Source: Felis catus (lineage: Eukaryota). Taken from it: a DNA stretch of 64,000 nt. Shown piece after piece: positions 493 to 60,959 of the stretch. How positions within the stretch are numbered: the first letter of the stretch is position 1; each line of letters opens with the position of its first letter. Under the pieces are notes generated by a model. The model did not search any database and was not told the DNA's origin. It saw only the letters and a list, made by a program, of their open reading frames with translations. The stretch is from positions 6,944,001 through 7,008,000 of the forward strand of contig NC_058382.1 in the NCBI RefSeq assembly GCF_018350175.1, written 5' to 3'. The position numbers and the translations under genes are program-made.

Positions 493-1395
493 CCCTTGGA
501 GAATGGCTCATCTCTTTCAGTCCTGGAGGACCAGTCCCTGCCCCTGGTCTGTGTCAACAGCAACCCCCCCAGTCAGGCTGAGCTGGGCCCCGGGGAGCTG
601 ACCCTGTGCTCCTCAAAGCCCTGGAACCCTGGGGTGCTGGAGCTGCCTCGGGCACAGGAGAGAGATGAAGGGGAATACACCTGCTGAGCTCGGAGTGCGG
701 TGGGCTCCCAGCACGCCTCCCTGAGCCTCTCTCTTCAGGGTGAGTGTCCAGGGGCTGCACAGTGGACCCTAATCCCTCAATGCCATTTGGCTCACTGGTC
801 CCCGAGCAGGCAGCCCCAGAGCCCGTTGTCCAGCTGCCGGAAGGCCAGGGCATGGGGTAGCGTGCGGCTCAGGAACATGGGGTGCCACAGCGGTGACGCA
901 GGGGGGCCTGGGGGACCGATGTCCAGAGACCAGCCGGGAGCAGAGGACACGGTGTAGCAGTCAAGCACATGAATCCACGAATCCATCGTCCTTCGCCTCA
1001 TCGTCCTCGTGTGAGCACTGCCGCAGGGGGAGGGGAGGCCCGAGGAGGGTGGGGATTGTGGCCGAGTCCCAGAACCAGCGCAGGAGGGACTGAACAGGTC
1101 AGAGGGCAGGGCAGGGGGGAGGCTGACCAGGTGTGAGGATTCCACAGTGTCCAGGACAGGACAGGCTGCGCCTGCTGTGCTCACAGCTGTCTATGGGGCC
1201 AGACCTGCACTCTGCCACCTCGTCTGCCCTCCAGCCCCTTAACTGGGAACCGGAGTGAATCAGTTGGCCCTGCATTCCCAGGACCAGACCGAAAGGCCCC
1301 GGTGTCTTCTCTCAGACTGAGATTCCTCAGGAAGGAGAAGCCAGGCCTGCAGGGGGCGTGGAGGAGGCCAACACCACCCCCAGTTAATCCCTCAG
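493..1395 (+). pseudogene. 3' remnant of a decayed inhibitory-type CD33-related Siglec (SIGLEC7/8/9-like): C2-set exon 493-739, degenerate TM exon ~873-1010, cytoplasmic exon 1316-1395
   Basis: Exon 493-739 (ag|...|gtgag) reads LENGSSLSVLEDQSL..VC..LTLCSSKPWNPGVLELP..DEGEYTC*ARSAVGSQHASLSLSLQ, with an in-frame TGA at 685-687 where CGA (Arg) is expected. The RLSWAPGS motif sits in a shifted frame. The TM exon starts GATAVTQGGLG and then frameshifts out of the hydrophobic frame. The cytoplasmic exon resembles RKK-ARPA-GV-E-AN but has a frameshift and a TAA. The 5' exons lie upstream of the window. Confidence 0.85.
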
Positions 1396-4669: not shown

Positions 4670-7646
4670 ATGTTGTTGCCTCTGCTGCTGCCCCTGTTGT
4701 GGGCAGGTGAGTGGGCGGAGGGGAGAGGGCCAGGCGGGCGGGGGCCGCTACTGACCCTCCATTCCCTGCAGGGTCCCGGGCTCAGGAGAGGAGATACTGG
4801 CTGCAGGTTCTGGAGTCGCTGGTGGTGCAGGAGGGTCTGTGCGTCTCCGTGCCCTGCAATTTCCTCTATCCCCTGAATAGTTGGAATGACTCTTACCCTG
4901 TGCATGGCTACTGGTTCCGGGAAGGGGCCAATGTAGCACAGGATGCTCCGGTGGCCACAAACAACCCAGGTCGAAAAGTGCAGAAGAAGACCCAGGGTCG
5001 ATTCCGCCTCCTTGGAAACCCCCGGGACTACGACTGCTCCCTGGACATCAGAGACGCACAGAGAAGGGACTCGGGGACGTACTTCTTTAGGGTGGAGAGA
5101 GGGCCTTCTGTGAGATATAATTTCCTACAGAACCGGCTCTCTGTGCGTGTGACAGGTAAGGAGTGGGGTCAAAGAGAGGACATGCATGGGTCCTGAGGGC
5201 CCCAGGGCAGGCCCGGGAGGGGACCCCCTGATTTCAATCCTGGCTGGCCTGGTGTAGAAGCTGCTTCTGGGGGCACACGCAGGGCCTGGGTCTCTGTCTC
5301 TCTTTCTCCCTCAGCTCTCACACGGACACCTGACATCCACATCCAGGGGCCCCTAGAATCTGGCCAGCCCAAGAAGATTACCTGTAGCGTGCCCTGGGCC
5401 TGTAAGAGGGGGACGCCGCCGACCTTCTCCTGGATCGGGGATGCCCTCACCTCCCTGGGCCACAGGACACACTTCTCCTCGGTGCTCACCCTCACCCCGT
5501 GGCCCCAGGACCACGGCACCGACCTCACCTGTCGAGTGAGATTCCCCGGAGCTAACGTGAGCACAGAGAGGACCATCCAGCTCAACGTGTCCTGTGAGTG
5601 CCAGGCCAGGACGCCAGGGTCCCTGAGGACAGTGGGTGCTGGGGGTGGGGGAGGCAGGGCTTGGGTGGGATACTTGGGGAGTATTCTTGGAAGCACAGGT
5701 TCAAATGGAGAGAATACCCGCCCCCCCCCCCCCCCCCCCGCCGCTCGTGACCACCTCACAATACTGCAGGTGACCAATTATTTGTTCCTGTTCCAGATGC
5801 TCCGCAGAACCTGATCATCCGCCTCTTCAGGGGAAATAGCACAGGTGGGAGAGACCTGGGGCACAACTGATGTCTCAGAGGTCAGATAAGGGAATGTTGT
5901 AAGGGTCTGATGGAATGAAACCCCATGGCTCCTTATCCCCTCCCTGGTCCCGCCCCCTGGCCGGACTCTCTAGAATCACTGTGAGTCCTATTCCACCGTG
6001 TGCTGTCACCACGGCTGCCTCCCTCTCCCCTGACCTCTCTCCCCTCCTTGCCATCATTCCCTTTTCCTGATTCTCCGCTTCTCCTGTGACCATGACATTG
6101 CACTGTCCCACAAGGCATCTTAAATACAGCTTCCTGTTGCCAGGCTCCGGGCCTCTGGCTGCTTCCTGCGTGACCCCGTGGGTAAGCCCGTCCCCTGGTG
6201 CTTCCAGTCGTACGTCTGCCCTGAAGACCCTCACAGATCTCTGTCCCGTCCCGATCGTCCTGAGTGCACTCCCCTGCCACTGGTGGGAGGGCCTTCCTCC
6301 GGAACAACCTGAGTCAATATCCTGGAAGTCACTTTAGACATTTCTGTGCCTCGCCCAACACTCCCCATGACTCAGTGAGTTTTGCAAACTGGACTTCCTG
6401 AAAATGTCACAGTGGCTCTCTTCCTCCACCCGCACAGCAGCAGCCCCGCCTCGGGCCTCTGTCTCTCTTACCTGGACACAGTGAGACCACCTGCACCCTG
6501 GTCCAGCCTTCTCTGTTCAGTCTCTGTCCCCTCCCCGTCCTGCCCGCTGCAGTTGGGCCCAAATGCATCCCTACATGCCCCAGATCGGACCCTGTTCCTC
6601 CCCTGCTCAAAACCCTCCCATGGCTCCCCGTGGCCCTCAGAGGAAAGGCTGAGAGCATCACCTGTGTGTGAGCCTCCGAATCTTCCCTGCAAGTGGTCAG
6701 ACCTACCTGTGTCCACACCTCTCCTCGGCATCACGCACCAAAGTCCACGTCCTGGGATGTTCTCTGCCAGGTCTAGACATGGCCAACTCTTGCTCAGAGG
6801 TCCATCTGCCTGTCCTGGGATCACCGGGTACCTGTCCTCACTTCCCCTGATGGGTCTTCACTCTTACTTGCCTTAGCTTGGAACACTTGTCTGCGAGACA
6901 CTATATTCCACCCCCCGTGTCTGTGGAAGGACAGAGGGAGAGAAGGGGCTCCCAGTCCTGCCCTTCTGACTCTCTCTGTCCCCTAGTCCCAGAGGCCCTG
7001 GGCAATGCCACCTCTCTGCGAGTTGAGGAGGGCCAGTCCCTACGCCTGGTCTGTGACACTGACAGCCACTTCCCCGCCAGGCTGAGCTGGTCCCGGGGAA
7101 GCCTGACCCTGAGCCCCTCCCAGCCTTCAGATCCCGGGGTCCTAGTGCTGCCCCGGCTGGTCTTGGGGGATGGAGGAGAATTCACCTGCCGAGCTCAGCA
7201 GCCGTGGGGCTTCAACCACGTCTCCCTGAACCTAATTGTGCAGGGTGAGTGCACGCAGGACACCTGCATTCCGAGGTGGGGCTGTGGACAGGACCAAGGT
7301 GTGGACTTAAGGAAACTCACTCCCATCCTCTTGCCCCAGGAATCTCCTGTTCCTGCCCCCTGATATCTGGGGAGCCGTGGAACACCTGGCCTCTTGTCCT
7401 CACCCTGCTCAGAGGGGCCCTCATGGGGGCTGGCTTCCTTCTCACCTATGGCCTCACCTGGATCTATTACACCAGGTGAGAAGCCCTTTCTCAAGACGTC
7501 CCAGATTTGGGTGACCCCTTGGGTGACGTCACATTCCTTGTCCTTTCCAGAGCAAACCCTCCACGGAACTGGTCTCTCATTTCAGAACTGTGTTTTCCAC
7601 CAGGTTCAGAGGCTCCAAAGAGGATAAGGCTGCAGGTTGTAAGTGA
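4670..7646 (+). CDS. Activating-type CD33-related Siglec, Siglec-14-like (V-set + 2 C2-set Ig, TM Arg, short tail), 394 aa
   Basis: Seven coding exons, all GT-AG: 4670-4706 ([12 protein letters not shown]), 4772-5155 (V-set, YFFRVERG), 5315-5593 (C2), 5797-5844 (linker YAPQNL), 6987-7244 (C2), 7340-7475 ([30 protein letters not shown]), 7604-7646 ([13 protein letters not shown]). Total 1185 nt, open. The TM matches recalled human Siglec-14 almost exactly; one-to-one orthology is not established. Confidence 0.9.
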
Positions 7647-8023
7647 GCCCCCTTCCTCGCCGTGATGCCGATGCCTGACAGCTGAAGATCCATCCAACTG
7701 TCACATCCCGAGACTCACCCTGGCACAGCTCTTGTGGAGCACGGCGGTGCTGGATGGCGTGGCCCTGCCTCTTCTCCAGAACTAAAGTCTCTTCACCTCC
7801 GCTGCTCGAGAAGCTCCCTGGTGGTTCGGCACCAATGGCGGGAGAGGGCAAGTGAGGGGATGGATAAATCTTTGTTATTATTAATTTGAATTATGTAGCC
7901 CCTTTGTAACATTTTGCTTCTACCTTAATGTGGTTGGGATAAGCCCATAATTCAACCCCATACTATATTGTTATAAATCTCATAATATTATTATTTTTAA
8001 AACAGCGAATGTTAAAGAGATCT

Positions 8024-8800
8024 TTTTTCTCTCTTTTTTGATGTTTCCTTTCTTTTTTTCTTCCTTCTTTTAGAATCCAAATTAGTTAACATATAGCATA
8101 ATAATAATTTCAGGAATAGAATTTAGCGATTCATCGCCTACATAGTACACTCAGTGCTCATCCCAACAGGTGCCCTCCTTAATGTCCCTTGCCCATTTAA
8201 CCCCCACCCCCACCCAATACCTCACCAGCAACCCTCAGATTGTTCTCTGTATTTAAGAGTCTCCTAAGATTTGTCTCCCTTTCTGCTTTTGTCTCATTTT
8301 TGCTTCCCTTCCCTTATGTTCATCTGTTTTGTCTCTTAAAGTCCTCCTATGAGTGAAGTCATAGGATATTTGTCTTTCTATGACTGACTAATTTTGCTTA
8401 GCATAATACCCTCCAGTTCCATCCACGTAGTTACAAATGGCAAGATTCCATTCCTTTTGATTGCCGAGTAATACTCCATTGTATATATAGACCACATCTT
8501 CTTTATCCATTCATCCATCGATGGACATTTGGGCTCTTTCCATACTTTGGCTATTGTTGAGAGTGCTGCTATTAACATTGGGGTGTACGTGCCCCTTCAA
8601 AACAGCACACCTGTATCCTTTGGATAAATACCTAGTAGTGCAATTGCTGGGTCATAGGGTAGTTCTATATTTTTAATTTTTTGAGAAACCTCCATACTCT
8701 TTTCCAGAGCAGCTGCACCAGTTTGCATTCTCCACAGCAGTGCAAGAGGGTTCTTCTTTCTCCACATCCTCGCCAACATCTGTTGTTTCCTCAGTTGTTA
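8024..8800 (-). mobile_element. 5'-truncated carnivore L1 with TSD
   Basis: ORF2 C-terminal peptides on the minus strand ([29 protein letters not shown]). TSD taaagagatct at 8013-8023 and 8801-8811. Confidence 0.92.
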
Positions 8801-8811
8801 TAAAGAGATCT

Positions 8812-9222
8812 CTTTTATTAGAAAAAGAAACCATTTCATGTTTATCCACATATTAACCACTCGATTGCTCTTAATTTCTTTGTATACATTAAGATTTCTC
8901 TACAGCATCGCTTTCCTTGTGCCTGAAATATTTTCTTATATTTCTTGTGGCATAGGTATGCTGGTGATGAATTCTCTAAGCTCTTTTTTGTCTAAAAGCT
9001 TCTGTTTACATTAGCTTGGAAAGATATTTTTTATTGGGTAAAGAATTTTAGGATAACATTGTCTTCCCTTTCCGTTCTTCAAATTCTTTTGTTTTTCATA
9101 GTGTCTTGTGAGAATTCTGTAATTCTTATCTTTCTTTGTTTGTAGTTTGTCTTTTTCTCTGGCTGGTTTTAATATTTTCTCTTTTTCCCTGGGTTTAAAT
9201 CATTTGGTTAATATATGCCTTC

Positions 9223-9263
<41 letters not shown>

Positions 9264-9656
9264 GGAAGAGACAGGAAGATGGGGGGAGTGGTAAGGGGGA
9301 AAACAAAGAGAGAGAAAATATTATCCTGTTTGGAATTTGTTGAGTACCTTGGATCCGCGGATTTATAACACTGATCAAACTTGTAAAAATTGAAGCCAAT
9401 ATTTATTTCAATTCTTTTTTTCTATTCTTATTCTCTCATATCCTCTGGGTCTGTCCTTTTACATATGGTTATGTGGCCTGATAATATCTCTTAGGGCCCT
9501 GAACATCTGTTTGCCATTTTCCAGATTTTTTCCTCTATATTCTGCTGTTTGAACAGGATCTACTGATACATCTCCAAGTTCACCGGTCATTCTACAATGT
9601 TGAATCTGCTGTTGATCTTATTCAGTGGAACTCTCATCTCAGATAATATATTTTCT

Positions 9657-9724
<68 letters not shown>

Positions 9725-10990
9725 TCCTTCTTTAAAAGTTGCATTTCCTTTGGGGCGCCTGGGTGACTCAGTCGGTTAGGCGTCTGCCTCTTGATCTCAG
9801 CTCAGGTCTTGATCTCACGGTTCGTGAATTCAAGCCCTGCATTGGGCTCTGCACTCACGGTGCAGACCCTGCTTGGGATTCTGTCTCTCCTTCAGTCTGC
9901 CCCTCCCCATTTGTTCTCTCTCACTCTCTCAAAATAAGTAAATGAACTTAAAAAATTTTTTTAAGTTACATTTCCTTTCTTTTTAATCTTACACTCCTTC
10001 TCCATATAATGGTGACGTTTTCCTTTACATCCTTGAGTATATATGGCACATACTTATAATAAGCTTTTTAATGTCTTTGTCTCCTAGATCTGCCTCCTGT
10101 GTCATGTCTGACCCTGATCCCATTGGATGAATTTTTCTGTTGAGTGTCACGTGTTTATAATTCTTTGTATGTCTGGTAAGTTTTCGCTGAGTGTTGGACA
10201 CTGTCAGTTTTATGTGGCTGACTGCATGCTTTTGTTGTATTTCTTTAAAAACATTGGTCTTTTTTTTTTTTTAAAGGCAGTTAGGTTACTAGCATGTTGG
10301 GCCAATATTTTTAAGACTTTTTAATTTTAGCCCCTCCTAAGATAGGTCTAGTGTTGGGCTAATTTTCTTTCACTTGAATGCCATCACCCTTTTGGAGCTT
10401 TCACTGAATACTCCATAGATTCAAGAAGGTATCTTTACTCTGGCTGGAGGGAATATACACATGTCCAAGCCCTTTGTGAGCTCTGGGAATCTTCCAACTA
10501 ATAACTCTCTGGTAATTGCTCTCTCCTTAGAAATTGTTCTCATTTGGGTTCATGGGGTTTCACCCTATGCTTGTGCAGATCCAACGACTCCAGGACCTTT
10601 CATGGAGACTCTGAACCCTTTCTCCACAATACTCCTGTCTGAAACTCTGACCTACATATTTTAGCCACATCAGCTTCCTAACCTTCAAAGTCTGGCCGCT
10701 CAACTCAGTGAAATTTCAGTCCCTTTTATGGTGCCCTTACCCTTTTTCTTACTCTGCTATCTACAAACAAACTCCTCACGGAAAACCTCAGTGATTATAT
10801 GGTTCACCTCATTTTTGTCCTTCTCTCAAGGATCACCATTCTTCCATGTATGAAAAGAGAAGTTTCTTGTATTTTGTTTGATATTCTAGTTGTTTACAGG
10901 AGGATAATTCTGGACCCTATGACTCTCTCATGCTCAGAAGCAGAAGTCTCCAGCAGACTGTTTGTTTGTTTATTTATTTATTTAATTTTA
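8812..10990 (-). mobile_element. Ancient fragmented L1M body, host to later insertions (also 7870-8010)
   Basis: Antisense-L1-type T-rich sequence (gtatgctggtgatgaattctctaagc), no intact ORF. Confidence 0.6.
9655..9727. repeat. (TTTC)n microsatellite. Other simple repeats: (GT)n 2077-2104, 9224-9260, 51791-51814; (CT)n 30991-31031.
   Basis: Directly visible. Confidence 0.95.
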
Positions 10991-11014
10991 AAAATATCTT
11001 TATTTCTTTTTTAA

Positions 11015-12830
11015 ATTAATTAATCAATCAATTTTTAAATTTACATCCAAGTTAGTTAGCATATAGTGCAACAATGATTTCAGGAGTAGATTCCAGTGAT
11101 TCATCCCCTATGTATAACATCCAGTGCTCATCCCAACAAGTGTCTTCCTTAATGCCCCTTATACATTTAGCCATCCTCCCTCCCACAACCTCTCCAGTAA
11201 ACCTCTCTTTGTTCTTCATAATTAAGAGTCTCTTATGTTTTGTCCCCCTCCCTGTTTTTATATTATTTTTGCTTCCTTTCCCTGTGATCATCTGTTCTGT
11301 GTCTTAAATTCCTCATATGAGTGAAGTCATATGATATTTGTCTTTTTCTGACTAATTTTGCTTAACATAATAGTNNNNNNNNNNNNNNNNNNNNNNNNNN
11401 NNNNNNNNNNNNNNNNNNNNNNNNNNNNNNNNNNNNNNNNNNNNNNNNNNNNNNNNNNNNNNNNNNNNNNNNNNNNNNNNNNNNNNNNNNNNNNNNNNNN
11501 NNNNNNGCTATTGTTGATAGTGCTGCTATTAACATTGGGGTGCGTGTGTCTCTTTCAAACACTACACCTGTATCCTTTGGATAGATAACTACTAGTTCAA
11601 TTGCTGGGTCGTAGGGTAGTTCTATATTTTTAATTTTTTGAGTAACCTCCATACTGTTTTCCAGAGTGGCTGCACCAGTTTGCATTCTCACCAGCAGTGC
11701 AAAAGGGTTCCTCTTTCTCCACATCTTCGCCAACATCTGTTGTTGACTGAGTTGTTAATGTTAGCCATTCTGNNNNNNNNNNNNNNNNNNNNNNNNNNNN
11801 NNNNNNNNNNNNNNNNNNNNNNNNNNNNNNNNNNNNNNNNNNNNNNNNNNNNNNNNNNNNNNNNNNNNNNNNNNNNNNNNNNNNNNNNNNNNNNNNNNNN
11901 NNNNNNNNNNNNNNNCTGGATTATTTGTCTTTTGGATGTCGAGTTTGATAAGTTCTTTATAGATTTTGGATACTAACCCTTTATCTGATATGTCACTTGC
12001 AAATATCTTCTCCCATTCCGTTGGTTGCCTTTTAGTTTTACTGACTGTTTCCTTCTCTGTGCGGAACCTTTTTGTTTTGATGAGGTCCCAATAGTTCATT
12101 TTTGCTTTTGTTTCCCTTGCCTCCGGAGATGTGTTGAGTAAGAAGTTGCTGCGGCCATGATCAAACAGGTTTTTGCCAGCTTTCTCCTCTAGGATTTTGA
12201 AGGCTTCCTGTCTTCTGTTTAGGTCTTTCATCCATGTTGAGTTTCTTTTTGTGTATGGTGTAAGAAAGTGGTCCAGGTTCATTCTTCTGCATGCCGCTGT
12301 CCAGTTTTCCCAGCACCACTTGCTGAAGAGACTGTCTTTATTCCATNNNNNNNNNNNNNNNNNNNNNNNNNNNNNNNNNNNNNNNNNNNNNNNNNNNNNN
12401 NNNNNNNNNNNNNNNNNNNNNNNNNNNNNNNNNNNNNNNNNNNNNNNNNNNNNNNNNNNNNNNNNNNNNNNNNNNNNNNNCTTTGTAATACAGCTTGACA
12501 TCCAGGATTGTGTTGCCTCCAGCTTTGGTTTTCTTTTTCGGGATTGCTTTGGCTATTTGGGGTCTTTTCTGGTTCCATACAAATTTTAGGAGTGTTTGTT
12601 CTAGCTCTGTGAAGAATGCTGGTGTTATTTTGATAGGGATTGCATTGAATATGTAGATTGCTTTGGGTAGTATTGACAGTTTAACAATATTTGTTCTTCC
12701 AATCCAAGAGCTTGGAATATTTTTCCATTTTTTGGTGTGTCTTCTTCAATTTCTCTCATAAGCTTTCTATAGTTTTCAGTGTATAGACTTTTCACCCCTT
12801 TGGTTAGGTTTATTCCTAGGTCTTTTATGT
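11015..12830 (-). mobile_element. 5'-truncated carnivore L1, partly N-masked
   Basis: ORF2 fragments [37 protein letters not shown]. Confidence 0.92.
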
Positions 12831-13818
12831 TTTTTATTTATTTATTTTAAAGATTTTAATTTTTGTAAGTAATCTCTACACCCAACTCTCAACCCCAAGA
12901 TTAAGAGTTACAGAATCTACTGACTGAGCCAGCCAGGTGCTCCCCCACCCCCTTGAAGTTTTAATAACTGTTTTATTAAGATACAACTTATATAACACAA
13001 AATTAATTCATTGTAAGTGTACAGTTCAATGGCTTTTTTAGTAAATTTATAGAGTTGTGTAGTCATTGTCACACATTTTTATTAGCCTAAAGAGGACCCT
13101 TGTGCCCATTTGTAATCAATACCAGTCCTTTCACAGCTCCAGGAACTCATTGATCTGCTTTCAGTCTCTAATGAACTATTTTATGAATATTTCATATACA
13201 TCGAATCACATAATATAAAGTCTGTTGTGCCTGATATCTTTCACCAGACATTAGGTTTTTGAGGTCCAAACATGTTAGAGCACATGCCATTAGTTAGTGG
13301 CATTTTATTCTCAATGTTATTACATTCTATGAATATACACCACATTTCATTTATGCATTCACCAGCCGAGGGACATTTCAATCATTCCCAGTTTTGGCTT
13401 TTAAGAATAATGTTGCTGATTCCACTCCCATTCCTATTCTGGTTCAGGATGATAGAAACTCCATTCCAGTGGGATGAAGCAAGAATACAGGCGCCCTCTC
13501 CTCCAAGTCTGAAGTTGAGGGCCACGGCACCCTCCTATGAAAGGGCAGGTGGCTACCCCACTTCTCATCCCCTGCCAGCTACGTGTTGAAGACCCTAAAT
13601 TCCAGGTGAACACAGCTGAGAAGTTAGAGGCTCTCTTCTTCAAGCCGCCCCCTATCCACAGGGCAGAGGCTCTACCTCTGAATACTGGTACTGGTAGGGA
13701 AGGCATGATGGATAGTATTTTCTAGAATGACAGAAATGTTTAATAGCTTGACAAGGGTTTTAGTTACATGAATAAATGCCAGCTCACCAAGTGATGTCTC
13801 TGAGCTCCCAGGGGTATC

Positions 13819-14182
13819 TGTTTTAGTCAGTTCAGGCCGCTATAACAAAGCACCACACACTGGGTAGCTTATGGACAACAGAAATTTATTTCTCACAGTT
13901 CTGAAGGCTGAGAAATTCAAGACCAAGACACCGACATATCCGGTGTCTTGTGAGAACACACGTCCTGGTTCACGGAGGGCTTTTCACTTGTCCTCATGTG
14001 GCAGGAGGGGTAAGGGTGCCGTCTAGGGTCTCTTTTATAAGGGCACACAAATCTCATTCAGGAAACTCTACCCTCCTAACCTAATCACCTCCCAAAGGCC
14101 GCACCTCCAAATACCATGGCACCGGGATTCGGGCCTCAGCACTTGAATGTTGGGGGGAAGATACAGCATTCAGTCCATAGCA
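13819..14182 (-). mobile_element. MaLR solo LTR (MLT1A-like)
   Basis: tgttttagtcagttcaggccgctataacaaagcaccac...cattcagtccatagca matches the recalled MLT1A reverse consensus. Confidence 0.75.
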
Positions 14183-14637
14183 AAGGCTAAAGCCACATTT
14201 GGTAAATATTCGTGCAGTCATTCATGTTACTCTGGATTAGGGGCGGGGTGGGGGGGGGGCTGCTGTGTGGTCATTTTGTAGCTTAGACAGTGTTCTTGTT
14301 TATGTCTGTGTTAAGAGAGGACTATGGAGAATTCTCATTCTTAGCTTGTTCCATCTCAGTCACAGAGTGGACTCGTCTGGTGTGATATCCTGTGAGATTA
14401 AAATAAAATTTTTTTTTAGGTTTTTTATTTTTGAGAGAGAGAGAAAGAGATAGAGCACGAGTGGGGAGGGGCAAAGAGAGAGGGAGACATAGAATCTGAA
14501 GCAGGCTCCAGGCTCTGAACTGTCAGCACAGAGCCCGATGCGTGGCTTGAACTTGTGAACCTCGAGATCATGACCTGAGCCAAGGTCGGATGCTTAACCG
14601 ACTGAGCCACCCAAGTGTCCCATGATCATTTATATTT

Positions 14638-15624
14638 ATTTTATTTTATTATTTTATTTTATTATGTTTTTAAATTTATATCCAAATTAGTTAGCATACA
14701 GTGCAACAATGATTTCAGGAGTAGATTCCTTAATGCCCCTTACCTATTTAGCCCATCCCCTTCTCCCACAACCCCCCCAGTAACCCTCTGTTTGTTCTCC
14801 ATAATTGTCTCTTATGTTTTGTCCCCCTCCCTGTTTTTATATTATTTTTGCTTCCTTTCCCTTGTGTTCATCTGTTCTGTGTCTTAAATTCCTCATATGA
14901 GTGAAGTAATATGGTATGTCTTTCACTAATTTTGCTTAGCATAATACCCTCCAGTTCCATCCGCGTAGTTGCAAATGGCAAGATTTCATTCTTTTTGATT
15001 GCTGAGTAATACTTCATTGTATGTATATACCACATCCTCTTTATCCATTCATCCATTGATGGGCTTTTGGGCTCTTTCCATACTTTGGCTATTGTTGATA
15101 GTGCTGCTATAAACATGGGGGTGCATGTGTCCCTTCGAAACAGCATACCAGTATCCTTTGGATAAACACCTAGTAGTGCAATTGCTGGGTCGTAGGGTAG
15201 TTCTATTTTTAGTCTTTTGAGTAACCTCCATACTGTTTTCCAGAGTGGCTGCACCAGTTTGCATTCTCACCAGCAGTGCAAAAGAGATCCTCTTTCTCCG
15301 CATCCTCGCCAACATCTGTTGTTGCCTGAGTTGTTAATGTTAGCCATTCTGACTGATGTGAGGTGGTATCTCATTGTGGTTTTAACTTGTATTTCCCTGA
15401 TGATGAGTGATGTTGAGCATTCTTTCATGTGTCGGTTGGCCATCAGGATGTCTTCCTTGGAGAAGTGTCTATTCACGTCTTTTGCCCATTGCTTCACTGG
15501 ATTATTTGTTTTTTGGGTGTCGAGTTTGATACGTTCTTTATAGATTTTGAATACTGACCCTTTATCTGATACGTCATTTGCAAATATCTTCTCCTATTCT
15601 GTCGGTTGCTTTTTAGTTTTACTG
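14638..15624 (-). mobile_element. 5'-truncated carnivore L1 with 16-bp TSD
   Basis: ORF2 C-terminal fragments. TSD atgatcatttatattt at 14622-14637 and 15625-15640. Confidence 0.93.
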
Positions 15625-16076
15625 ATGATCATTTATATTTGATAGGAGAACACCGGGGCCTGGCTGTGAATGCCAGCAGGGTCTGCTTTACTCTTTATTA
15701 AAGGGGGAAAAAATGAAAATAATAGAGTAAAAAGATAGGAAGTTGAGAAGTAAATGGGGATCACATCACCGATAGACTTGGTTCTTCACGTAAAGAGCTG
15801 GCGTTTCACTTTGGAAAACGGATACTTCACACTGAGTGTCAAAACACACACCAGTGAGTAGCAACCACGTCTGATAATAAAATACTGAACCTGCAGCATT
15901 TTCCCTTTACTAGAAATTAGCGAATCCAAATGTATCCTAGATCAGTATTTCTCTCAGCATCTTGCTTTTTAATATGCCATCTTGACTTGAAGAGAAAAGG
16001 GAAGGCCCAGCTGAGGCTGCCTGTGTGTGATATTACACGACCCCAACCTAGACAGTGGGACCTGAGTAAGACCACA

Positions 16077-23596: not shown

Positions 23597-26500
23597 ATGG
23601 CCCTGTCACTGCTGTTGGCCCTGCTGTGGGGTGGTGAGTGGGCCACGGGGCCAGAAGGGGCCTGGGTGGGGGCGCAGGCTGGGCTTGCAGCTTGAGCCCT
23701 CTGTCTCCTTCAGGGTCTCAGGCTCAGGCCCCAGGATTCTCCCTGCAAGTGCAGAGCGTGGTGATGGTGCAGGAGGGCCTGTGTGTGCACGTGCCCTGCA
23801 CCCTCTCCTACCCCCGGATAGGCTGGACGGAGGACACCCCCGCCCTCGGCTCCTGGTTCGTGGTCGGGACAGACACGAACAAGGGAAGACCGGTGGCCAC
23901 AAACAAGCAGGATCAAGAGCACGGTGGCTCCGGGGGCCGGTTCCAGCTCACTGGGGATCCCCGGAACCGCAGCTGCTCCTTGCTGATCAGAGACGCCCAG
24001 GCGGAGGACTCGGCACAGTACTTCTTTCGGGTGGAGAGAGGCAGTTACGTGCGGTACAATTTCGTGGAAAGCCCTCTCTATCTGGAAGTGACAGGTATGG
24101 ACCGGGCTCCAGCAGGACTGGGCGGGAAACTCTCCTCCTCCCTGCCGTTCCCCAACCCCCCCCCCACACACACACACTGTGGGGAGCAGATCAGGGGTCA
24201 CCCCTGCAGCACCCCCTCCCAGGGCTAGGATTGTGCCCTCTCTTTGCCCCAGCCCTGACACAGAAGCCCGATGTCTACGTCCCAGAGACCCTGGAAGCAG
24301 GGCGCCAGGCGACACTCATCTGTGTGTTTAACTGGGCCTTTGAGGAATGTCCAGCCCCTACTTTCTCCTGGATGGGGGCCGCCGTCACCACCCCAGGGCC
24401 CGGACGCAAATCCTCCTACTTCTCAGTGCTTTCTCTCACACCGAGACCCCAGGACCACGGCACCCACCTCACGTGCCGGGTAGACTTCTCCAGAAAGGGC
24501 GTGAGCACAGAGACAACCGTTCGACTTAACATCACCCGTGAGTCTGGTGGCCAGGGCATCAGGGTGTGCAGACGGGCACGGCGGGATGTGGCCGGCGGGG
24601 CATCCAGACAGGTCGGTGGGGAGTCGCATCACGCTGCCTCGGCCCTGGGAGGGGCTTGGGGACGCCATCCGCTCCCCAGCCACAAGCATCTTTGACACCA
24701 GTTTGTCACTTGCCTCCCGGAGGATATCACGCTTTCTTTTCCCCCGAGGGGGTTCCCTCTTACTGCCAGGAGCCCCACGGTCCTCCCCCAAGCCAGGTCT
24801 CAATCTTGTTGCAGATGTCCCCAAAGACCTAGTTATCAGCGTTTCCAGAGCCAAGGCATCAGGTACGTATTGAGGGCCTGGGAGGGTGGGGCTGGTCCTC
24901 TGCGGAGGGTGGAGGCGAGGGAGACTCTGTTCCTCCTTCAGCTTCTCTCTCTCTCTCCCGGCTTCTGTCTCTGCAGCCCCGGAGCCCCAGGGAGACAGCC
25001 CACATCTGGAAGTCCAGAAAGGCCAGTTCCTGCAGCTGGTCTGTGCTTCCGAGAGCCAGTCCCCTGCCACCCTGAGCTGGGCCCTGGAGGACAGAATCCT
25101 TTCTTGGTCTCACCCCTGGACCCCCGGCCCCCTGGCTCTGGTGCTGACCCGGGTGATGCCTGGGGATTCAGGCTGCTACACCTGCCGAGCGGAGAACGGG
25201 CGTGGCTCCCAGAGCCTCACCCTGAACCTCTCCGTGCAGTGTGAGTGCGACCATCAGGAGCCTGGTTTCCAGAAAGGGAGAAGGAAGAGGGGGGCTGGGG
25301 CTGGGGGGCAGGGCCCCGGAGCTCGAAAGGGACCTGGAACCCCAGGCCGAGGGGGCTAACAATTCTGATTCCAACTCCAACATGGGTTTTCCACCACACC
25401 ACCAAACAATTCTCTGATGCCCGCTGGGTGTTCTGCAACTCAACTCGGTTGAACACTGTCTACCTTGTGGTGGTGGCAGATCTCACAGGTGAAGGGCTCG
25501 GTCCCGCAAGGTCCCCCCCGCTCCTTGGGCCCCCACCTCAGAGGCCAGTCACAAGCCAAGTTGACCAACTGGCTCTAGGTCGGAGTTTCCCATGACCCCC
25601 CCACCCCCACCTTGAATTCAATTGATTTGATAAAATGGGGCACAGAACTCAGAGGAACATTGCACTTACTGGATGGGGGGTTATTATAAAATGATACAAC
25701 AGCAGACAGAAGAGATGAGTGGGGGGCAAGGCCGTTGCCCGCGTACCAGTATGGAGGCTCTTCAAACCCCATTCTCTTGGGTTTTTATGGAGGCTTCAAC
25801 ACGGAGGCAGGATTGACCAAAGTTTTGGCCACTGCCGTCCGATCCCACCTGCAATCGCTCTCCCTTCCCCGGAAGTCAGGGCAGGGATGGAAAGTCCCAA
25901 AGCTTCCGTCACCGTCACCGAGGTTGGTTCTCTGGCCACCAGCCACCCCCCCCCCCCAGGTGCTTTCCAACGGTCACCTCATTTACATCAACCCAGTTGT
26001 GGTTTGAAAGGGGTTTGTTATGAATATCAAGACACCTTTATCGCTCTTGTCTTTTAGGAAATTCCAAGGGTTTTAGGAACTCTGTGCCAGGAAGGGGAGA
26101 GATATGTATATTTATTTAATTTTTTTAAGTTTATTTATTTTGAGAGAGTGTGTGCGTGCGTGTGTGTGTGTGTGTGTGAGCAGGGGAAGGGCAGAGACAG
26201 AAGGAGACAGAGAATCCCAAGCAGGCTCCATGCTGTCGGCGGAGAGCCCGATGTGGGGCTTGAACTCACAAACCGTGAGCTCACGACCTGACCCAAAACC
26301 AAGAGGCAGACACTTAACTGACCGAGCCGCTCAGGTGCCCTTAAATATTTTATTATAAATCACAAGCATAGAGACCAGCCCTTCTTACCAGTCTGTTCCC
26401 TTGGGCCACTCAGTGGAGAATCAGTCACTAGGTGATTCCATGCTCGGCCGGCAGCCCTGCCCTCTTTGTCTCCAAGGACCGTTCTCTGCCCTGAGGGAAC

Positions 26501-42508: not shown

Positions 42509-43927
<1,419 letters not shown>

Positions 43928-48200: not shown

Positions 48201-51200
48201 CAGCTGTTTTTCTTGGTGTTATTCGCACAAGACAAAAAGACTGCATTCTGCAAAGACCCGGACTTTGTACTTTTCGGTGGCAGGATCCAAGCTCTGCCCC
48301 CGGAGCACAGCTGTTCTCCGTGCTCCCAGAGACAGAAGAGGCAAGCAGTTAAGAGCAAGGGCTTTGGTGCCTGGGTTTCAAGGCCAGTCCTACTGCTAAT
48401 TATGGGACTCTGGGCATGTCGCTGTACCTCCGAGTCCTCCTTCACCTGAGAAATGGGGATAAAAACAGAACGTCCAGCTTAGGGAGGGAAACCAATAGAC
48501 TCATGCGTGGAATGCATGCCCGGCACACACTTGGCAGCTGCTAAGTGGAGAATGAGATCATAACTGTTATTGCCAGGGCATGTCCTAAAGGGCCAGCGCA
48601 GAGCCAAGCACCGAAGAAGAATAGTGCTCAGTGCCCCACATTCATTTGTTCAGTGGGTGCGAGGGGTGTTGCGGTGAATGAGAAAGCAAGACCTTTGTCC
48701 TCACGTAACTGAGAAACCAGCAGGGAGACACAGATATAAACAAGTTAAAGAATAAATAGACAGGGGCGCCTGGGTGGCTCAGTCGGTTGGGCGTCCGACT
48801 TGGCTCAGGCCATGGTCTCGTGGTTCGTGAGTTTGAGCCCCGCGTCGGGCTCTGTGCCGACAGCTTGGAGCCTGAAGCCTGCTTCAGATTCTGTGTCTCC
48901 CCCTCTTTCTGCTCGTGCTCTGTCTCTGTCTCTCAATTATAAATAAAAGTTAACAAAATAAAAATAAATAAATAGACCATTTTCTTTTTCTTTAAAGTTT
49001 ATTTATTTGAGAGAGAGAGAGAGAGAGGGAGGGAGGGAGGGAGGAGGGGGAGGGGCAGACAGAGATTCCCAAGCAGACTCCCCAAGGTCAGTACAGACAC
49101 TCATGCAGGACTTGAACCCATGAACCGTGAGGTCATGACCTGAGCTGAAACCAAGAGTGGGACGCTCAACTGACTGAGCCACCCGGGTGCCCCTAAACAG
49201 GCCACTCTCAGATATGGGCAAGTGGTGTTAAGGAAATGAAGGAGAGTGATGGGAAGGAGGACAGGAAGTGATCATCAGGAGGGGAGTGGCTTTCATTCGT
49301 TCTTGTACGTTCATTCGTCCACCCAGGGAACGTTGTGCTGGGGGGTATTTGTGATGTAGAATCCTATCCTCAGGGAACCATCATGCTGGAAGGGGAAACC
49401 ACCTGGGGGGGTGGGAAGGATGTTGCCTGAGGGCTGAAAGGGTGCTTCCTAGAGGGGATTTGGGAGCTGGGCTGTGGAGGACCAATGGGAGTTTGCCAGG
49501 TGAAGAGGACTGTGTTTGTTTGCAAAGAGGTACGGGGACAGCTAGGTCAGGCATGTGGAGAGAGGCAAGGCATTCAGGCCTCAGAGGCAGCCCCGTTCAC
49601 CGCGGAGGGCGGGGGTGGCAGGGGAGTGACCCTCTGGTGCTACCACAGCTTACTGGAACGCCACCCGGGCCTTCATGATCCTGTCGTCCCTGTGCGCCAC
49701 CTCGGGCATCATCATGGGTATCCTGGCCTTTGCTCAGCAGCCCGCCTTCACACGCCTCTCCCGGCCCTTCTCCGCGGGCATCCTGTTTTTCGCCTCCAGT
49801 GAGTGGCCCCCCCCTTCAACCCCCCCCCGTCCCCTTCCCCACTCCCACCCACTCCCATTCCCTGCCCGTTTCCGTCCCGAACTCCACTCTCATCCGGGGT
49901 TCCACACCCATCCTAGTCTCACCCCGGCCCCAACCCCAACTCCGAGACGGGTTCTAGTGCCTCCTGCCAGTCAGCCTCTTCTGACCCCAGCTGCGACCCT
50001 GCGGCTCAGTTCTGGCACTTAACCACCCAGAGCCGGCATCACACCCCACTGGTTTGAGGGTGCCATTTCCAACCAGGCTGCCCCTACGTGGGTTGTGGGT
50101 GGAGTCCCCGGGCCATCTGCCCTTTGGACCAACTGCTGCACATTCAGGGGTTCCTGGGACCCGGTCAGGTTCAAACATTCGCCAGAAGAACTCACGGCAC
50201 TCAGGAAAGCACTAAGCTCCGGATCATGGATTTATCATGAAGGATACACCTCAGCACCAGCTAAATCAAGAGATGCGTAGGGGTGGAGCCTGAGAGGGGC
50301 TTGAAGGCAGGACCCCCGCCCCCACCCCAATAGCCTCCCCGGGGGATCAGAGCACACCGTGGAGCACATTGAAGTGTTCCCCAGCCAGAAAGCTCCAGCA
50401 CTCCACGATGGAGTCGCTGGTCACATGACTGGGCTTAACCTCTAGCTTCCTTCCCCCGAGGTTCGTCTGATGCCCAGTGACTCAAAGCCCCACCAGTCTG
50501 TTCTGTTCCCGAGGCTGGTCTTTCTGGTGACCAGTTCCTACCTAGGGTCATCTCAGCTCATCAACATAAATTCGTGTTGACCGGAGAGGCTCAGCAAGAA
50601 CAAAGACACTCCTATTACCCAGAAAGTTCCAAGGATTTAGCGTCTCCCTTCCAGGAACCAGAGCCCCAGACCAGCCCAGGCAAATTCTTTATTGCACAGC
50701 ACAGCCCCGGCCCATCCTCGCCCCAACCCTACTCCCCTCACATACTTACCTTTTTCCTTTCCCACCCCCACCCGGCCCTCCCCCTTCCTCAATCTCATTC
50801 CCACCCTCACCTGCAAACCCTACCCCACCCCTTTTCCCTCCCCCCTCCCCCCACCTTCTCTCTCTAGCCTTTTTTGTCCTGTTGGCCTTGGCCATTTACA
50901 CTGGAGTCACTGTCAGCTTCCTCGGTCGCCGCTTCGGGGACTGGCGTTTTTCCTGGTCTTACATCCTGGGCTGGGTGGCCTTGCTCATGACCTTCTTCGC
51001 AGGTAAGGGGGCTTGGGGGTGGCAAGGTCAGTATCCGTGGCAGAGTGGGCGGCACTCTAGAGGGCGAGATGATGGGGTGTCCCACACGGGCCTCCCAGCA
51101 CAGCACGGAGCCAGAAGGCAGACTGCAGGTCTGCAGACACGCAGGGAGGAAGAGAGTGCTGTGTTGGGGTCTTGGGTTGGGAGCCCAGCCTAGAAGGACT

Positions 51201-58170: not shown

Positions 58171-58923
58171 ATGGAGCTCTGTCGGTCCTTGGCCTTATTC
58201 ACTGGCTGCCTGGGCCTGGTGTCCATCCTGATCGCTCTGAGCACGGATTTCTGGTTTGTGGCCGTGGGGCCTAACTTTTCATTTCACTCGGGCCTCTGGC
58301 CAGAGGGGTTTCACAATATGGTGGCAGGTAAGGGATGGCAGTCTCTTTTGGTGGGGGGCAGAGGGGCTGCGTGAGGGGCGGGCACCCAAATCTTCTCTCT
58401 TGCACAGCCTACATCCACGTGACACAGAGCTTCAGCATTCTGGCCGCCCTGTGTGGCCTGGTGTCGGTGATCCTCATGGTCCTGTCCTACATCCCCTCAG
58501 TGTCCATTCCGGGCCGCGGGCCCCTTGCCTCCTCTGTCACAGCCTTTGTTGCAGGTAGACTCCAGGCTGTACCTGGGGACTGGGGACTGGTGAGTTCCCA
58601 CAGAGGTGCTGAGCAGTCTCTCCTGTCTTCATCCTCAGCCATCTTCGTGATGGTGGCCATGGTCGTCTACACCAGTGAGCGGTGGAACCAGTCCCAACAC
58701 CCCCAGATCCAGTCCTTCTTCTCCTGGTCTTTCTACCTGGGCTGGGTTTCGATGATTCTCTTCCTCTGTGCAGGTAACTGCTGCTCCAGGAACTGGAGAC
58801 GCCGGCTGGGGGGCCTCTGAGAGAGCAGGGTGGGGCAGGTGTTAACCTCTCTCTGTCACCCCAGGTAGCCTGAGTCTGGGTGCTCATTGCAGTGCCCCCC
58901 GGCCTGGCTATGACACCTTGTGA
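58171..58923 (+). CDS. NKG7: Natural killer cell granule protein 7, 165 aa
   Basis: Exons 58171-58327, 58408-58554, 58639-58773, 58865-58923 (498 nt): MELCRSLAL..STDFWFVAVGP..HSGLWP..YIHVTQSF..FFSWSFYLGW..PRPGYDTL*. Confidence 0.97.
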
Positions 58924-60959
58924 GCGAGAGAGGCGACAACAGCAAGATGAGGCGCTATTCTCTGAAGACACCATCAGGAGCCTCCGGCCCCCGCAGCCCC
59001 GCCTCCGGCCCTTACCCCCAGCCCTCCCCCAACCCCTTCATTTGCTTCTTTACCCATTCAACAAACATTTGCTGGGATCTGGTAATTCTGGGATTAATTC
59101 CGTCATGACATAAGCGGAGGGCAAGCCAGCTCCATGCTGGGTGACAGAAAGGACTCAGAGCCCTTACCTGTCACCCGTCTGCTACCAGCCGGTATAGGGG
59201 CCACTGTGGCCCCGTGTCAGCTCCCTTCCCCAGGCCTTGCCTTTCTCCCTGTTTCCACCTCAAGACCCTGTCCTTTGTCTTTCCCACATTAGTGCTCCTT
59301 CCTTCTTTCTCCCTGCTTTTGCCACCCCTGTCTTCACTCTGGTCCTCCTTGCTCATTTCATTCACTCATTCACTCATTCACTCATTCATTCATTCACTCC
59401 TTCAGCTGGCTTCTCCTGAGTTCATCCTTTCTGTTGGGTCTCCCTGGGGATGCTGATGGGAACCTGAGACCTGGGCCTTGCCCACGGGGGGCTGCAAGTC
59501 CGGTGGGGGAATTGAGACAGCAGTCAGGCGGTGGCAGCGGGGGGGGGGGGAGGTGAGCTTTCTGGGGAGAGGGTGTTTAGGGGTTTCTCGAGGGCCAAGG
59601 CAAAGTCATCCGGGCAGTGGGGCCCAAAGGTGTGGAGAGGCTGGAGGTTGTCAGGGGATGGAGAACAGTGCTCTGTGGCAGAATGTGGAATGCAGAGGTC
59701 ATTGGGGTGTGAGGGTGGAGAGGTGGGTGAGAGCCAGGCCCCTAAGGCCACAGTGACTCTCTCTTGAGAGCAATGGGGGGCTAGAAGAAGGTCGTGAGGT
59801 GGGGAGGGACAGCGCCAGCTGCAGGTGCCCTATAGATCCCTCTGGGACATGCAGGGAGGTCAGAAAGGACAAAGGAGCTTGGCAATGCAATGGGTATGAC
59901 TGGGACCGGAGCATGAGACGGAAAAGAGGGAAGGGGCCAGAAAGATTCAGGGGCCGGAAGGAATGGGACACAGGGATCCAAGGGCTTTGTGGAGTGATGG
60001 GCAGGAGGGGGCCAGGTTAGTGCCCAGGGTTCTGGTGCAACCAACTTGGGTGGGATGGTGGGGTCATCCCTGTTTTGGTGGGAGATGTTGAGCTCAGTTG
60101 GGATGTGGTTGGCAGGGGTCTGGGACAGAGAAGTGGGCTGGAGATGGTTTGGGTTGCTATCAGAGAATCGGTGGCCGAGGGAGCCGTGGCTGCGAGGGAA
60201 ACTCATTGGGTAAGAAGGTGCAGGATGGAGATTCCAGGAAAACCAGCCCTGGGAAGTGGAGGGAAGATCAAGAACAGGAGCCTGCATGGGGGTCTGAGAA
60301 GGCACAGCCAGAGAGTTGGGGGCCTGGAGAGCTTCTGGGGTCAAAGGAAGAATTTTCAGAAGGATATGGTCTATCGTGTCATGGCCATCTGACTCTGAGC
60401 TGTCACTTTGTTAGAAAAGCTGTGTGTGGGGGGGTTTATGTGTGTGTGGGGGGTGTGTGTGTGGGTGTGGGTGGGTGGTTATCTCTTTAAGTGGCTGATG
60501 GGAGAGGGGGTTCTGGAACTCCTCCTGCCTCACAGAGACCCAGTCTCCCTTCCCCCACACCTCTGGACTCTGTGTCTAAGAAGCCCCTTGAGCAGGGTGT
60601 CAGTCATTTAGGTGGGTGTGTGCATGGGGGTTGGGGGAGGGCACTGGACAGGTTAGAGGCACACTCCACTGGAGGATGGAGATCTTTGAAAGACAGAGAG
60701 GTCCTTAAGCTGTGACTCCCTGTGGGTAAGGTCTCAAGGCGTCCAATAGTAGCAGTAGGACATGGGAGAAGGAGGTCTTGGGTTTGGGAAGGGCCTGAGG
60801 GAGGGGTCCCCAGACAGGGGTGCTGGGGTGAAGTCTGGGATATGTAGGGACATGTATGTGTGGGTCTCAAGGGCTTGAAAGAGCTGAAAGAGGGGCCTGG
60901 GGGTGGGAGGGGTGTTGGCCAATCTTGCGTGTGTGACCCTCTGCAGCAGCCTCCCTGGC

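What the first reader, a model, noticed from the sequence alone, without database searches (positions are those of the whole stretch)
4670..7646. Intact activating-type Siglec with a Siglec-14 transmembrane module on a different ectodomain, directly upstream of SIGLEC10
Seen: an open 394-aa gene keeping the sialic-acid-binding Arg (YFFRVERG), a [26 protein letters not shown] with a buried Arg, and a 14-residue tail with no Tyr motif. Established: human Siglec-14 has this TM and signals through DAP12/TYROBP; it lies at the far end of the cluster, paired by gene conversion with SIGLEC5. Inference: the activating TM/tail cassette predates the primate-carnivore split, and in felids it is carried by a separate gene next to SIGLEC10, giving an activating sialic-acid receptor whose inhibitory partner is unidentified. 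This is relevant because cat A/B blood types reflect Neu5Gc versus Neu5Ac (CMAH), so ligand availability varies between individuals.
Basis: partly seen in the sequence, partly recalled or inferred. Interest (0 to 1): 0.8.

Follow-up and report, generated by a model that had tools for sequence, protein, structure and literature searches.

The report
Cat activating Siglec beside SIGLEC10
This is a real, intact cat gene for a sialic-acid receptor of the activating (DAP12-type) kind. It is already in RefSeq under the misleading name SIGLEC14 and belongs to an old placental gene lineage, not to a cat novelty.

Summary
Seven GT-AG exons at window 4670-7646 (+) give a 394-aa protein with a V-set domain (sialic-acid Arg119), two C2 domains, a transmembrane helix with Arg360 and a 14-residue tail without tyrosine. 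It is identical to RefSeq [quoted passage not shown]. SIGLEC10, C19orf84 and three claudin-family genes (LIM2/NKG7/CLDND2 by inference) follow downstream.

The gene is not the SIGLEC14 orthologue. Cats have that gene separately (gene A, 115 kb upstream), paired with a SIGLEC5-like gene at 96% identity in the first two Ig domains. A tree of C2b plus the membrane segment splits Arg-TM Siglecs into two starred clades:
- one with all primate SIGLEC14 hits and felid gene A;
- one with this gene and its counterparts in carnivores, rhino, horse, whales, camels, bats, pangolin, sloth, tenrec and golden mole.

So the gene is not felid-specific, and no primate or rodent member was found.

A candidate inhibitory partner exists. 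It is an intact four-Ig ITIM gene 155 kb away on the opposite strand, the orthologue of dog "SIGLEC13". It shares a 93-100% identical DNA tract of about 490 bp over the C2a exon, although the V-sets are only 61% identical.

Expression and DAP12 binding could not be tested.

The parts
4670..4706 (+). Exon 1: start codon and signal peptide
   Evidence: ATG at 4670, GT donor at 4707.
4772..5155 (+). Exon 2: V-set domain with the sialic-acid Arg119 (codon 5089-5091) and Cys36/41/101
   Evidence: Best solved-structure matches are CD33 (157 bits), Siglec-8, Siglec-10, Siglec-5 and Siglec-7.
5315..5593 (+). Exon 3: first C2-set domain (C2a)
5171..5659 (+). Gene-conversion tract shared with gene E (G000:C39 about 7.1069-7.1074 Mb, minus strand)
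   Evidence: Identity is 93-100% over intron 2 end, exon 3 and intron 3 start (two indel-rich 60-column intron-2 bins, window 5132-5170 just before the tract and 5231-5276 inside it, drop to 57-75%), against 65-87% in the V-set exon. No alignment extends beyond 5659.
5797..5844 (+). Exon 4: 48-nt linker exon
6987..7244 (+). Exon 5: second C2-set domain (C2b)
   Evidence: It groups with the C2b of other species' genes of the same type.
7340..7475 (+). Exon 6: stalk and transmembrane helix with Arg360 (codon 7411-7413)
7604..7646 (+). Exon 7: short tail ([13 protein letters not shown]) and TGA stop
   Evidence: Tails of the form [FC]R[GN]S...C[KND] mark this gene lineage.
496..741 (+). Decayed C2b pseudo-exon of the upstream neighbour, gene D (called SIGLEC8 in other felids)
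   Evidence: in-frame stop and a lost LSW motif. Gene D's V-set, just outside the window, carries a TGA.
23716..24093 (+). V-set exon of SIGLEC10, the downstream neighbour
43361..43927 (+). C19orf84, a synteny marker
   Evidence: Pfam PF17703, E = 1e-67.

Best explanation
The gene (called X here) encodes a three-Ig CD33-related Siglec of the activating class. Most likely the V-set domain binds sialylated glycans through Arg119. Arg360 in the membrane helix pairs with the acidic residue of the adaptor DAP12 (TYROBP), whose ITAM then signals through Syk. The 14-residue tail carries no signal of its own.

In evolutionary terms X is not SIGLEC14. It is the cat member of a separate, old placental lineage of Arg-TM Siglecs, defined by its C2b, TM and tail module. 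In cat, and by a fused camel gene model also in camel, the gene lies immediately upstream of SIGLEC10. Databases name its members variously SIGLEC14, SIGLEC13, SIGLEC8 or CD33.

Its 5' half (V and C2a) is repeatedly overwritten by gene conversion from other cluster members. The main donor or recipient is the ITIM-bearing gene E on the opposite, inverted arm of the cluster. X and E therefore behave as a loose activating/inhibitory pair. The pair is tight in dog and pangolin. In cat only the C2a exon is shared and the ligand-binding V-set has diverged.

Shown here: gene structure, identity with the RefSeq model, paralogy with SIGLEC14, taxonomic breadth, and the conversion tract. Inferred: sialic-acid binding, DAP12 coupling, expression and the pairing function.
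For: Structure: identical to RefSeq protein P0152.

Cluster map from whole-genome searches. Plus strand: A 6.833 Mb (Arg-TM), B 6.850, C 6.931, D 6.941, X 6.949, SIGLEC10 6.968. Minus strand: E 7.10-7.11, F 7.126, G 7.139, H 7.172, and an Arg-TM relic at 7.179. Downstream in the window lie C19orf84 and three PMP22/claudin-family ORFs, as beside human SIGLEC10 by my recollection of the human map.

Signature table:
- 35 proteins share X's pre-TM, TLLRG and [FC]RGS-type tail. They come from Laurasiatheria, sloth and tenrec.
- 47 have the SCxCVTEEQ / TLIRG / CGG-tail type. These include 13 of the 16 primate SIGLEC14 hits and felid gene A. The other 3 primate hits are splice variants with the same pre-TM but no CGG tail.

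Tree of C2b+pre-TM+TM: two clades, each 98/94*. Forcing felid X into the SIGLEC14 clade costs 176.8 lnL, p-AU 2e-42.

Gene A against B: V 96%, C2a 97%, C2b 54%, the SIGLEC14/5 pattern.

Gene E: four Ig domains, an uncharged TM, LHYASL and TEYAEI motifs, and no stops.

X against E:
- DNA is 93-100% identical over window 5171-5659.
- Within-species identities are dog V 82 / C2a 84, pangolin 85/90, rhino 75/85, mink 68/95.
- V and C2a trees pair X with E by lineage.

Constraint: the sialic-acid Arg is kept in every X-type protein in which the V-set motif could be read (31 of 35; the other 4 gave no motif match), and the TM Arg is kept in all 35.
Against: No expression evidence was obtained.

DAP12 association rests only on homology of the TM with SIGLEC14.

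In cat the V-sets of X and E are only 61% identical, well below the A/B pair of this same cluster (96%), so shared ligand recognition is doubtful.

Synteny next to SIGLEC10 outside cat rests on fused gene models from camel and a felid. The rhino locus flank was too short to reach the neighbour.

The absence of primate and rodent members rests on one ranked word search limited to 120 listed hits.
Confidence: 0.72

Rival explanations
1. It is simply the cat orthologue of human SIGLEC14, as RefSeq names it.
For: The TM helix is nearly identical to chimp SIGLEC14. The TM plus tail segment is 62% identical. It has the same three-Ig, Arg-TM, short-tail architecture. NCBI gives it that name.
Against: Cats have a different gene (A, 6.833 Mb) that groups with primate SIGLEC14 and is paired with a SIGLEC5-like neighbour at 96-97% identity in the first two domains. 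X falls in the sister clade at 98/94*, and the AU test rejects moving it, p = 2e-42. X is 48% identical to chimp SIGLEC14 overall. It lies beside SIGLEC10, not at the distal end of the cluster.
Confidence: 0.03
2. It is the carnivore orthologue of primate SIGLEC13 (deleted in humans), with a different TM exon.
For: NCBI names several X-type proteins SIGLEC13. Tarsier 'SIGLEC13' (P0009) is 59% identical to X over V, C2a and C2b. Papers group Siglec-13 with Siglec-17 among the two CD33rSiglecs lost in humans; its DAP12 coupling is from my recollection of Wang et al. 2012, which could not be opened.
Against: Tarsier SIGLEC13 and many 'SIGLEC13/CD33-like' proteins carry a Lys-type TM (EAAVK), not the Arg type. 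In the C2b tree tarsier SIGLEC13 groups with cat gene H at 99/93*, outside both the X clade and the E clade. No chimpanzee SIGLEC13 sequence or map position could be obtained.
Confidence: 0.1
3. It is a felid-specific chimera made by exon shuffling of the SIGLEC14 TM/tail onto another ectodomain.
For: Trees of the V-set and of the TM do disagree. The V-set groups with feliform paralogues D, H, F and G, and C2a groups with E.
Against: The same C2b-TM-tail module with the same tail type occurs in at least ten other orders. The cat TM exon is not derived from cat gene A: it is 78% identical to A's against 86-88% to the meerkat and hyena X genes. The discordance sits in the 5' half and matches conversion tracts rather than a 3' cassette swap.
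Confidence: 0.04
4. The open frame is intact but the gene is silent or non-functional in cats, a pseudogene in waiting, as human SIGLEC14 and SIGLEC16 null alleles are common.
For: No RNA evidence was obtained here. The immediate neighbour D is a pseudogene in this assembly. Activating Siglecs are often lost, according to a review.
Against: The ORF, all splice sites, Arg119, the cysteines and Arg360 are intact. Cat and cheetah proteins are 97% identical and both are open. The TM/tail is conserved across orders.
Confidence: 0.1

Closest known systems
Human/primate Siglec-14 (DAP12-coupled, paired with Siglec-5)
   Same: Three Ig domains, a nearly identical Arg-containing TM helix, a short tyrosine-free tail, a homologous tail exon, and membership of the CD33-related cluster.
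   Different: It belongs to a separate paralogous lineage (sister clade in the C2b-TM tree). It lies beside SIGLEC10, not beside SIGLEC5. Its ectodomain is 39-60% identical by domain. Its conversion partner is gene E, not SIGLEC5. The cat keeps its own SIGLEC14-type gene A.
Dog/pangolin/bat 'SIGLEC13' (NCBI name), here the orthologues of cat gene E
   Same: The V and C2a domains fall in one clade and are homogenised within species. In cat the C2a exon DNA is 93-100% identical.
   Different: Gene E has four Ig domains, an uncharged TM and ITIM/ITIM-like motifs, so it is inhibitory. It lies on the other, inverted arm of the cluster.
Siglec-16/Siglec-11 and other paired immune receptors (PILR, KIR)
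   Same: An activating DAP12-type member and an inhibitory ITIM member kept similar by gene conversion.
   Different: In cat the similarity is confined to C2a. The ligand-binding V-set is only 61% identical, so pairing is partial at best.
Primate Siglec-13 (tarsier protein used as proxy)
   Same: A three-Ig ectodomain of the same broad clade, with a charged TM residue.
   Different: It has a Lys-type TM of a different sequence family, and its C2b groups with cat gene H.

Membership tests
CD33-related Siglec | N-terminal V-set domain with the conserved sialic-acid-binding Arg and the Siglec cysteine pattern | tested here: met
   YFFRVERG with Arg119; Cys36, Cys41 and Cys101. Solved-structure matches to CD33 and Siglec-8/10/5/7 at E = 1e-39 to 1e-45.
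CD33-related Siglec | Location in the CD33rSiglec cluster flanking LIM2/NKG7/ETFB | tested here: met
   Eleven V-set exons lie within 0.35 Mb. SIGLEC10, C19orf84 and claudin-family ORFs lie downstream.
DAP12-coupled activating Siglec | Positively charged residue in the TM helix and a short tail without ITIM | tested here: met
   Arg360; a 14-residue tail with no Tyr.
DAP12-coupled activating Siglec | Physical, charge-dependent association with DAP12 | not testable with these tools
   Needs co-immunoprecipitation or a surface-expression assay with Arg360Ala. No complex prediction was run, because cat DAP12 is a spliced gene and cannot be given by reference.
SIGLEC14 orthologue | Groups with primate SIGLEC14 in the non-converted 3' half | tested here: not met
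   It falls in the sister clade at 98/94*. AU test p = 2e-42.
SIGLEC14 orthologue | Adjacent to SIGLEC5, with which it shares near-identical first two Ig domains | tested here: not met
   Genes A and B fill this role: V 96%, C2a 97%. X against A or B is about 50% in the V-set.
Primate SIGLEC13 orthologue | Same TM type and same C2b lineage | tested here: not met
   Tarsier SIGLEC13 has a Lys-type TM and groups with cat gene H. Caveat: the tarsier name is automatic, and chimpanzee SIGLEC13 was not available.
Primate SIGLEC13 orthologue | Same chromosomal position | not testable with these tools
   No primate genome was available, and the key papers are not held.
Paired activating/inhibitory receptor (X with E) | Near-identical ligand-binding domain maintained by gene conversion | tested here: inconclusive
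   In cat the V-sets are 61% identical, but the C2a tract is 93-100% identical at DNA level. V-sets are 82% identical in dog and 85% in pangolin.

The most novel reading that the evidence does not exclude
X represents an unnamed, ancient placental lineage of DAP12-type Siglecs that sits between the SIGLEC8-like gene and SIGLEC10. The lineage is retained in Laurasiatheria, Xenarthra and Afrotheria but lost in primates and rodents, so it has escaped study. It forms an activating/inhibitory pair with gene E through gene conversion between the two inverted arms of the cluster.
Probability: 0.4. Interest if true: 0.55.

Novelty: new member of a known kind. Interest (0 to 1): 0.35.

Why it matters
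Activating Siglecs are thought to act as counter-traps against pathogens that exploit inhibitory Siglecs. All functional work concerns the primate genes (Siglec-14, Siglec-16) and mouse Siglec-H or CD33.

This work shows three things:
- Cats, dogs, horses, whales and other mammals carry a second Arg-TM Siglec lineage that automatic annotation merges with SIGLEC14.
- Cats also keep a true SIGLEC14/5-like pair.
- The second lineage exchanges sequence with an ITIM Siglec on the other arm of the cluster.

This corrects orthology assignments used in comparative counts of Siglec genes. It also names concrete receptor pairs to test in veterinary immunology. The link to cat A/B blood groups (Neu5Gc versus Neu5Ac) is a reasonable experiment but has no support yet.

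Tried and rejected
RNA evidence:
- The look-up of sequencing runs listed runs that hold 0.7-0.9 of the sampled words, introns included, so they are DNA-like and uninformative.
Residues 203-216 were masked in the local domain queries and in the C2a tree. Only local pairwise alignments of stored proteins on the closed script machine included them.

Synteny in other species through the look-up of encoding contigs:
- the dog and camel proteins were not on record;
- the tenrec record had no DNA;
- the rhino locus was obtained, but its 10-kb flank did not reach the next gene.

Search for Lys-type TM relatives, meant to recover chimpanzee SIGLEC13: only 3 hits.

Papers that map SIGLEC13 or non-primate clusters (Angata 2004, Wang 2012, Cao and Crocker 2011) are not held.

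No Lys-type TM exon was found in the cat loci fetched.

The V-set tree is poorly resolved (28 of 45 forks open) and was used only for the supported within-lineage pairs.

Complex prediction and structure prediction were not used. Cat DAP12 cannot be referenced, and a fold would add nothing to the argument.
Full report
OBSERVATION

The region was read and spliced by script. Seven exons with AG acceptors and GT donors (4670-4706, 4772-5155, 5315-5593, 5797-5844, 6987-7244, 7340-7475, 7604-7646) give an open 1185-nt reading frame of 394 residues.

- the sialic-acid Arg in YFFRVERG (Arg119, codon 5089-5091);
- a TM helix with Arg360 (codon 7411-7413);
- a 14-residue tail without tyrosine.

The V-set exon matches solved CD33, Siglec-8, Siglec-10, Siglec-5 and Siglec-7 domains at E = 1e-39 to 1e-45.

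The translation is identical to database protein P0152, 'sialic acid-binding Ig-like lectin 14 isoform X3 [Felis catus]'. That protein is recorded on a contig of the same length as the window's contig. The gene is therefore real at the sequence level and is already annotated.

SURROUNDINGS

The next V-set exon downstream (window 23716-24093, +) is SIGLEC10: human Siglec-10 scores 153 bits against 113 for Siglec-8. Further downstream lie C19orf84 (43361-43927, Pfam E = 1e-67) and three PMP22/claudin-family ORFs at about 49.7, 58.3 and 60.9 kb. These fit LIM2, NKG7 and CLDND2, the gene order beside human SIGLEC10 by my own knowledge of the human map.

Whole-genome searches with the TM exon and the V-set exon, followed by tblastn on fetched loci, give the cat cluster on contig C39.

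Plus strand:
- A (6.833-6.838 Mb; V, C2, C2, Arg-TM)
- B (6.850)
- C (6.931)
- D (6.941)
- X (this gene, 6.949)
- SIGLEC10 (6.968)

Minus strand, beyond the non-Siglec genes:
- E (7.100-7.108)
- F (7.119-7.127, CD33-like)
- G (7.139)
- a V-set pseudogene (7.144)
- H (7.171-7.173)
- an Arg-TM relic (7.179)

The relic has stops in its C2b and pre-TM and a CGG-type tail exon. Gene D, which other felids annotate as SIGLEC8, has a TGA in its V-set in this assembly. It also has a decayed C2b pseudo-exon at window 496-741.

WHAT THE GENE IS

A search restricted to the TM and tail returned 231 proteins from placentals and marsupials. Nearly all are auto-named SIGLEC14. The Arg-TM module therefore long predates the primate-carnivore split.

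Aligning the pre-TM, TM and tail shows two sharply different signatures.
- X type: pre-TM SCPQxSGEQ, TLLRG, and a tail of the form [FC]R[GN]S...C[KND]. It occurs in 35 proteins from felids, meerkat, hyena, dog, seals, mustelids, rhino, horse, whales, bats, sloth and tenrec. Camel, pangolin and golden mole proteins lack the typed tail (splice variants) but join the same clade in the tree below.
- 14 type: pre-TM SCxCVTEEQ, TLIRG, and a tail beginning CGG. It occurs in 47 proteins, including 13 of the 16 primate hits, chinchilla, and felid gene A (lion P0296 and fishing cat P0311, mapped to 6.833-6.838 Mb). The other 3 primate hits are splice variants with the same pre-TM but no CGG tail.

A maximum-likelihood tree of C2b+pre-TM+TM (131 columns, 53 rows) splits the rows into these two groups. 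Each side has support 98/94*. Forcing the felid X sequences into the 14-type group costs 176.8 log-likelihood units, p-AU 2e-42. One caveat applies: the group was defined after the tree had been seen.

Gene A and its neighbour B are 96% (V) and 97% (C2a) identical but only 54% in C2b. That is the SIGLEC14/SIGLEC5 pattern. Gene A is therefore the cat SIGLEC14 orthologue, and X belongs to a different, sister lineage.

Because sloth, tenrec and golden mole have X-type genes, the lineage dates at least to the placental ancestor. No primate or rodent X-type protein appeared among the 120 best TM/tail matches. This suggests, but does not prove, loss in Euarchontoglires.

Two fused gene models show the same adjacency outside this assembly:
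- a dromedary 'SIGLEC10' model with an X-type C2b and TM followed by SIGLEC10-like domains;
- a felid model joining a D-like V-set, X and SIGLEC10.

THE 5' HALF AND THE PARTNER

The best full-length ectodomain match to X is dog 'SIGLEC13' (P0024, 570 aa). Its cat orthologue is gene E. Gene E has four Ig domains, an uncharged TM, LHYASL and TEYAEI motifs, and no stops. It is an intact inhibitory Siglec.

X and E share a DNA tract of about 490 bp (window 5171-5659: the end of intron 2, the C2a exon and the start of intron 3). Identity there is 93-100%, apart from two indel-rich 60-column intron-2 bins (window 5132-5170 just before the tract and 5231-5276 inside it) at 57-75%. It is 65-87% in the V-set exon, and nothing aligns beyond 5659. 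This is the signature of recent gene conversion between genes 155 kb apart on opposite strands.

Within-species identities between X and E are as high as, or higher than, cross-species X identities:

| Species | V | C2a |
|---|---|---|
| dog | 82% | 84% |
| pangolin | 85% | 90% |
| rhino | 75% | 85% |
| mink | 68% | 95% |

The V and C2a trees pair X with E lineage by lineage. Pangolin is supported at 100/98* and 99/89*. Cat E is sister to cat and cheetah X in C2a at 99/82*.

In cat, however, the V-sets of X and E are only 61% identical. The closest V-set to X is that of CD33-like gene F, at 72%. X and E thus look like a paired receptor set that is tight in some orders and has come apart in the ligand-binding domain in felids. 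It reflects conversion of the 5' half, not shuffling of a 3' cassette.

IS IT SIGLEC13?

Some proteins named SIGLEC13 or CD33-like carry a different, Lys-type TM (EAAVK). One of them is tarsier 'SIGLEC13' (P0009). In the C2b tree the tarsier protein groups with cat gene H at 99/93*, outside both the X clade and the E clade.

On these two tests X is not the SIGLEC13 orthologue. The tarsier name is automatic, however, and neither chimpanzee SIGLEC13 nor its map position could be obtained.

MECHANISM

By homology with Siglec-14, which reviews list among the Siglecs that carry a positively charged TM residue and signal through DAP12, the most likely working is as follows:
1. The V-set domain recognises sialoglycans through Arg119.
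2. Arg360 mediates assembly with DAP12.
3. ITAM and Syk signalling follows.

Two observations support a constrained function. Arg119 is kept in every X-type protein in which the V-set motif could be read (31 of 35), and the TM Arg in all 35. The membrane helix itself is almost invariant across orders; the TM-plus-tail exons are 62-93% identical between species, similar to C2b. None of the mechanism was tested directly.

LIMITS

No RNA evidence was obtained. Synteny outside cat is indirect. The absence of the lineage from primates and rodents is provisional. The literature on non-primate clusters could not be read, so this lineage may already have been described under another label.

VERDICT

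X is an already annotated but misnamed member of a known kind of receptor. The useful additions are the orthology correction, the taxonomic breadth of the lineage, and a candidate inhibitory partner.

Noticed in passing
L029 (G000:C39:6941461-6941850) and window 496-741: Gene D, annotated as SIGLEC8 in cheetah, tiger and lynx, has an in-frame TGA in its V-set in this assembly (GLCV*VPC, where gene H has Arg). Its C2b exon has decayed and carries a stop. It is probably a pseudogene in the domestic cat.
   Followed up: partly
G000:C39 6.941 Mb (+) and 7.172 Mb (-); L029 and L035: Genes D and H, 231 kb apart on opposite strands, have 97.6% identical V-sets and 98.9% identical C2a domains. This is a second case of sequence exchange between the two inverted arms of the cluster.
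   Followed up: partly
G000:C39 6.833 and 6.850 Mb; L025 and L026: Genes A (Arg-TM, CGG tail) and B are 96-97% identical in V and C2a but 54% in C2b. They form the cat counterpart of the SIGLEC14/SIGLEC5 pair.
   Followed up: partly
L036, G000:C39:7178600-7179700 (-): A relic of a SIGLEC14-type gene lies at the far end of the minus-strand arm. It has a C2b with two stops, a TM exon with a stop in the pre-TM, and a CGG-type tail exon. No V-set was found within 15 kb upstream.
   Followed up: partly
window 49675-50022, 58335-58820, 60903-61352 (+): Three ORFs match the PMP22/claudin family. They are consistent with LIM2, NKG7 and CLDND2 following C19orf84, as in the human map.
   Followed up: partly
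window 5726-5750: A poly-C run of about 23 bases lies in intron 3 of the gene, just downstream of the conversion tract.
   Followed up: no
window 6127-6300: A lion gene model (P0153) translates this stretch of intron 4 as coding sequence with 97% identity. This is probably intron retention or a mis-prediction.
   Followed up: no
window 8000-16000 (N runs at 11375-11506, 11773-11915, 12347-12480): The intergenic stretch between this gene and SIGLEC10 is AT-rich (GC 0.32-0.42) and contains masked or gap runs. The N runs were left untouched.
   Followed up: no
database proteins: Counterparts of this one gene are auto-named SIGLEC14, SIGLEC13, SIGLEC8 (ferret, seal) or CD33 (an older dog record). 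Several records fuse it with SIGLEC10 or with neighbouring genes. Names in this cluster are not a guide to orthology.
   Followed up: yes
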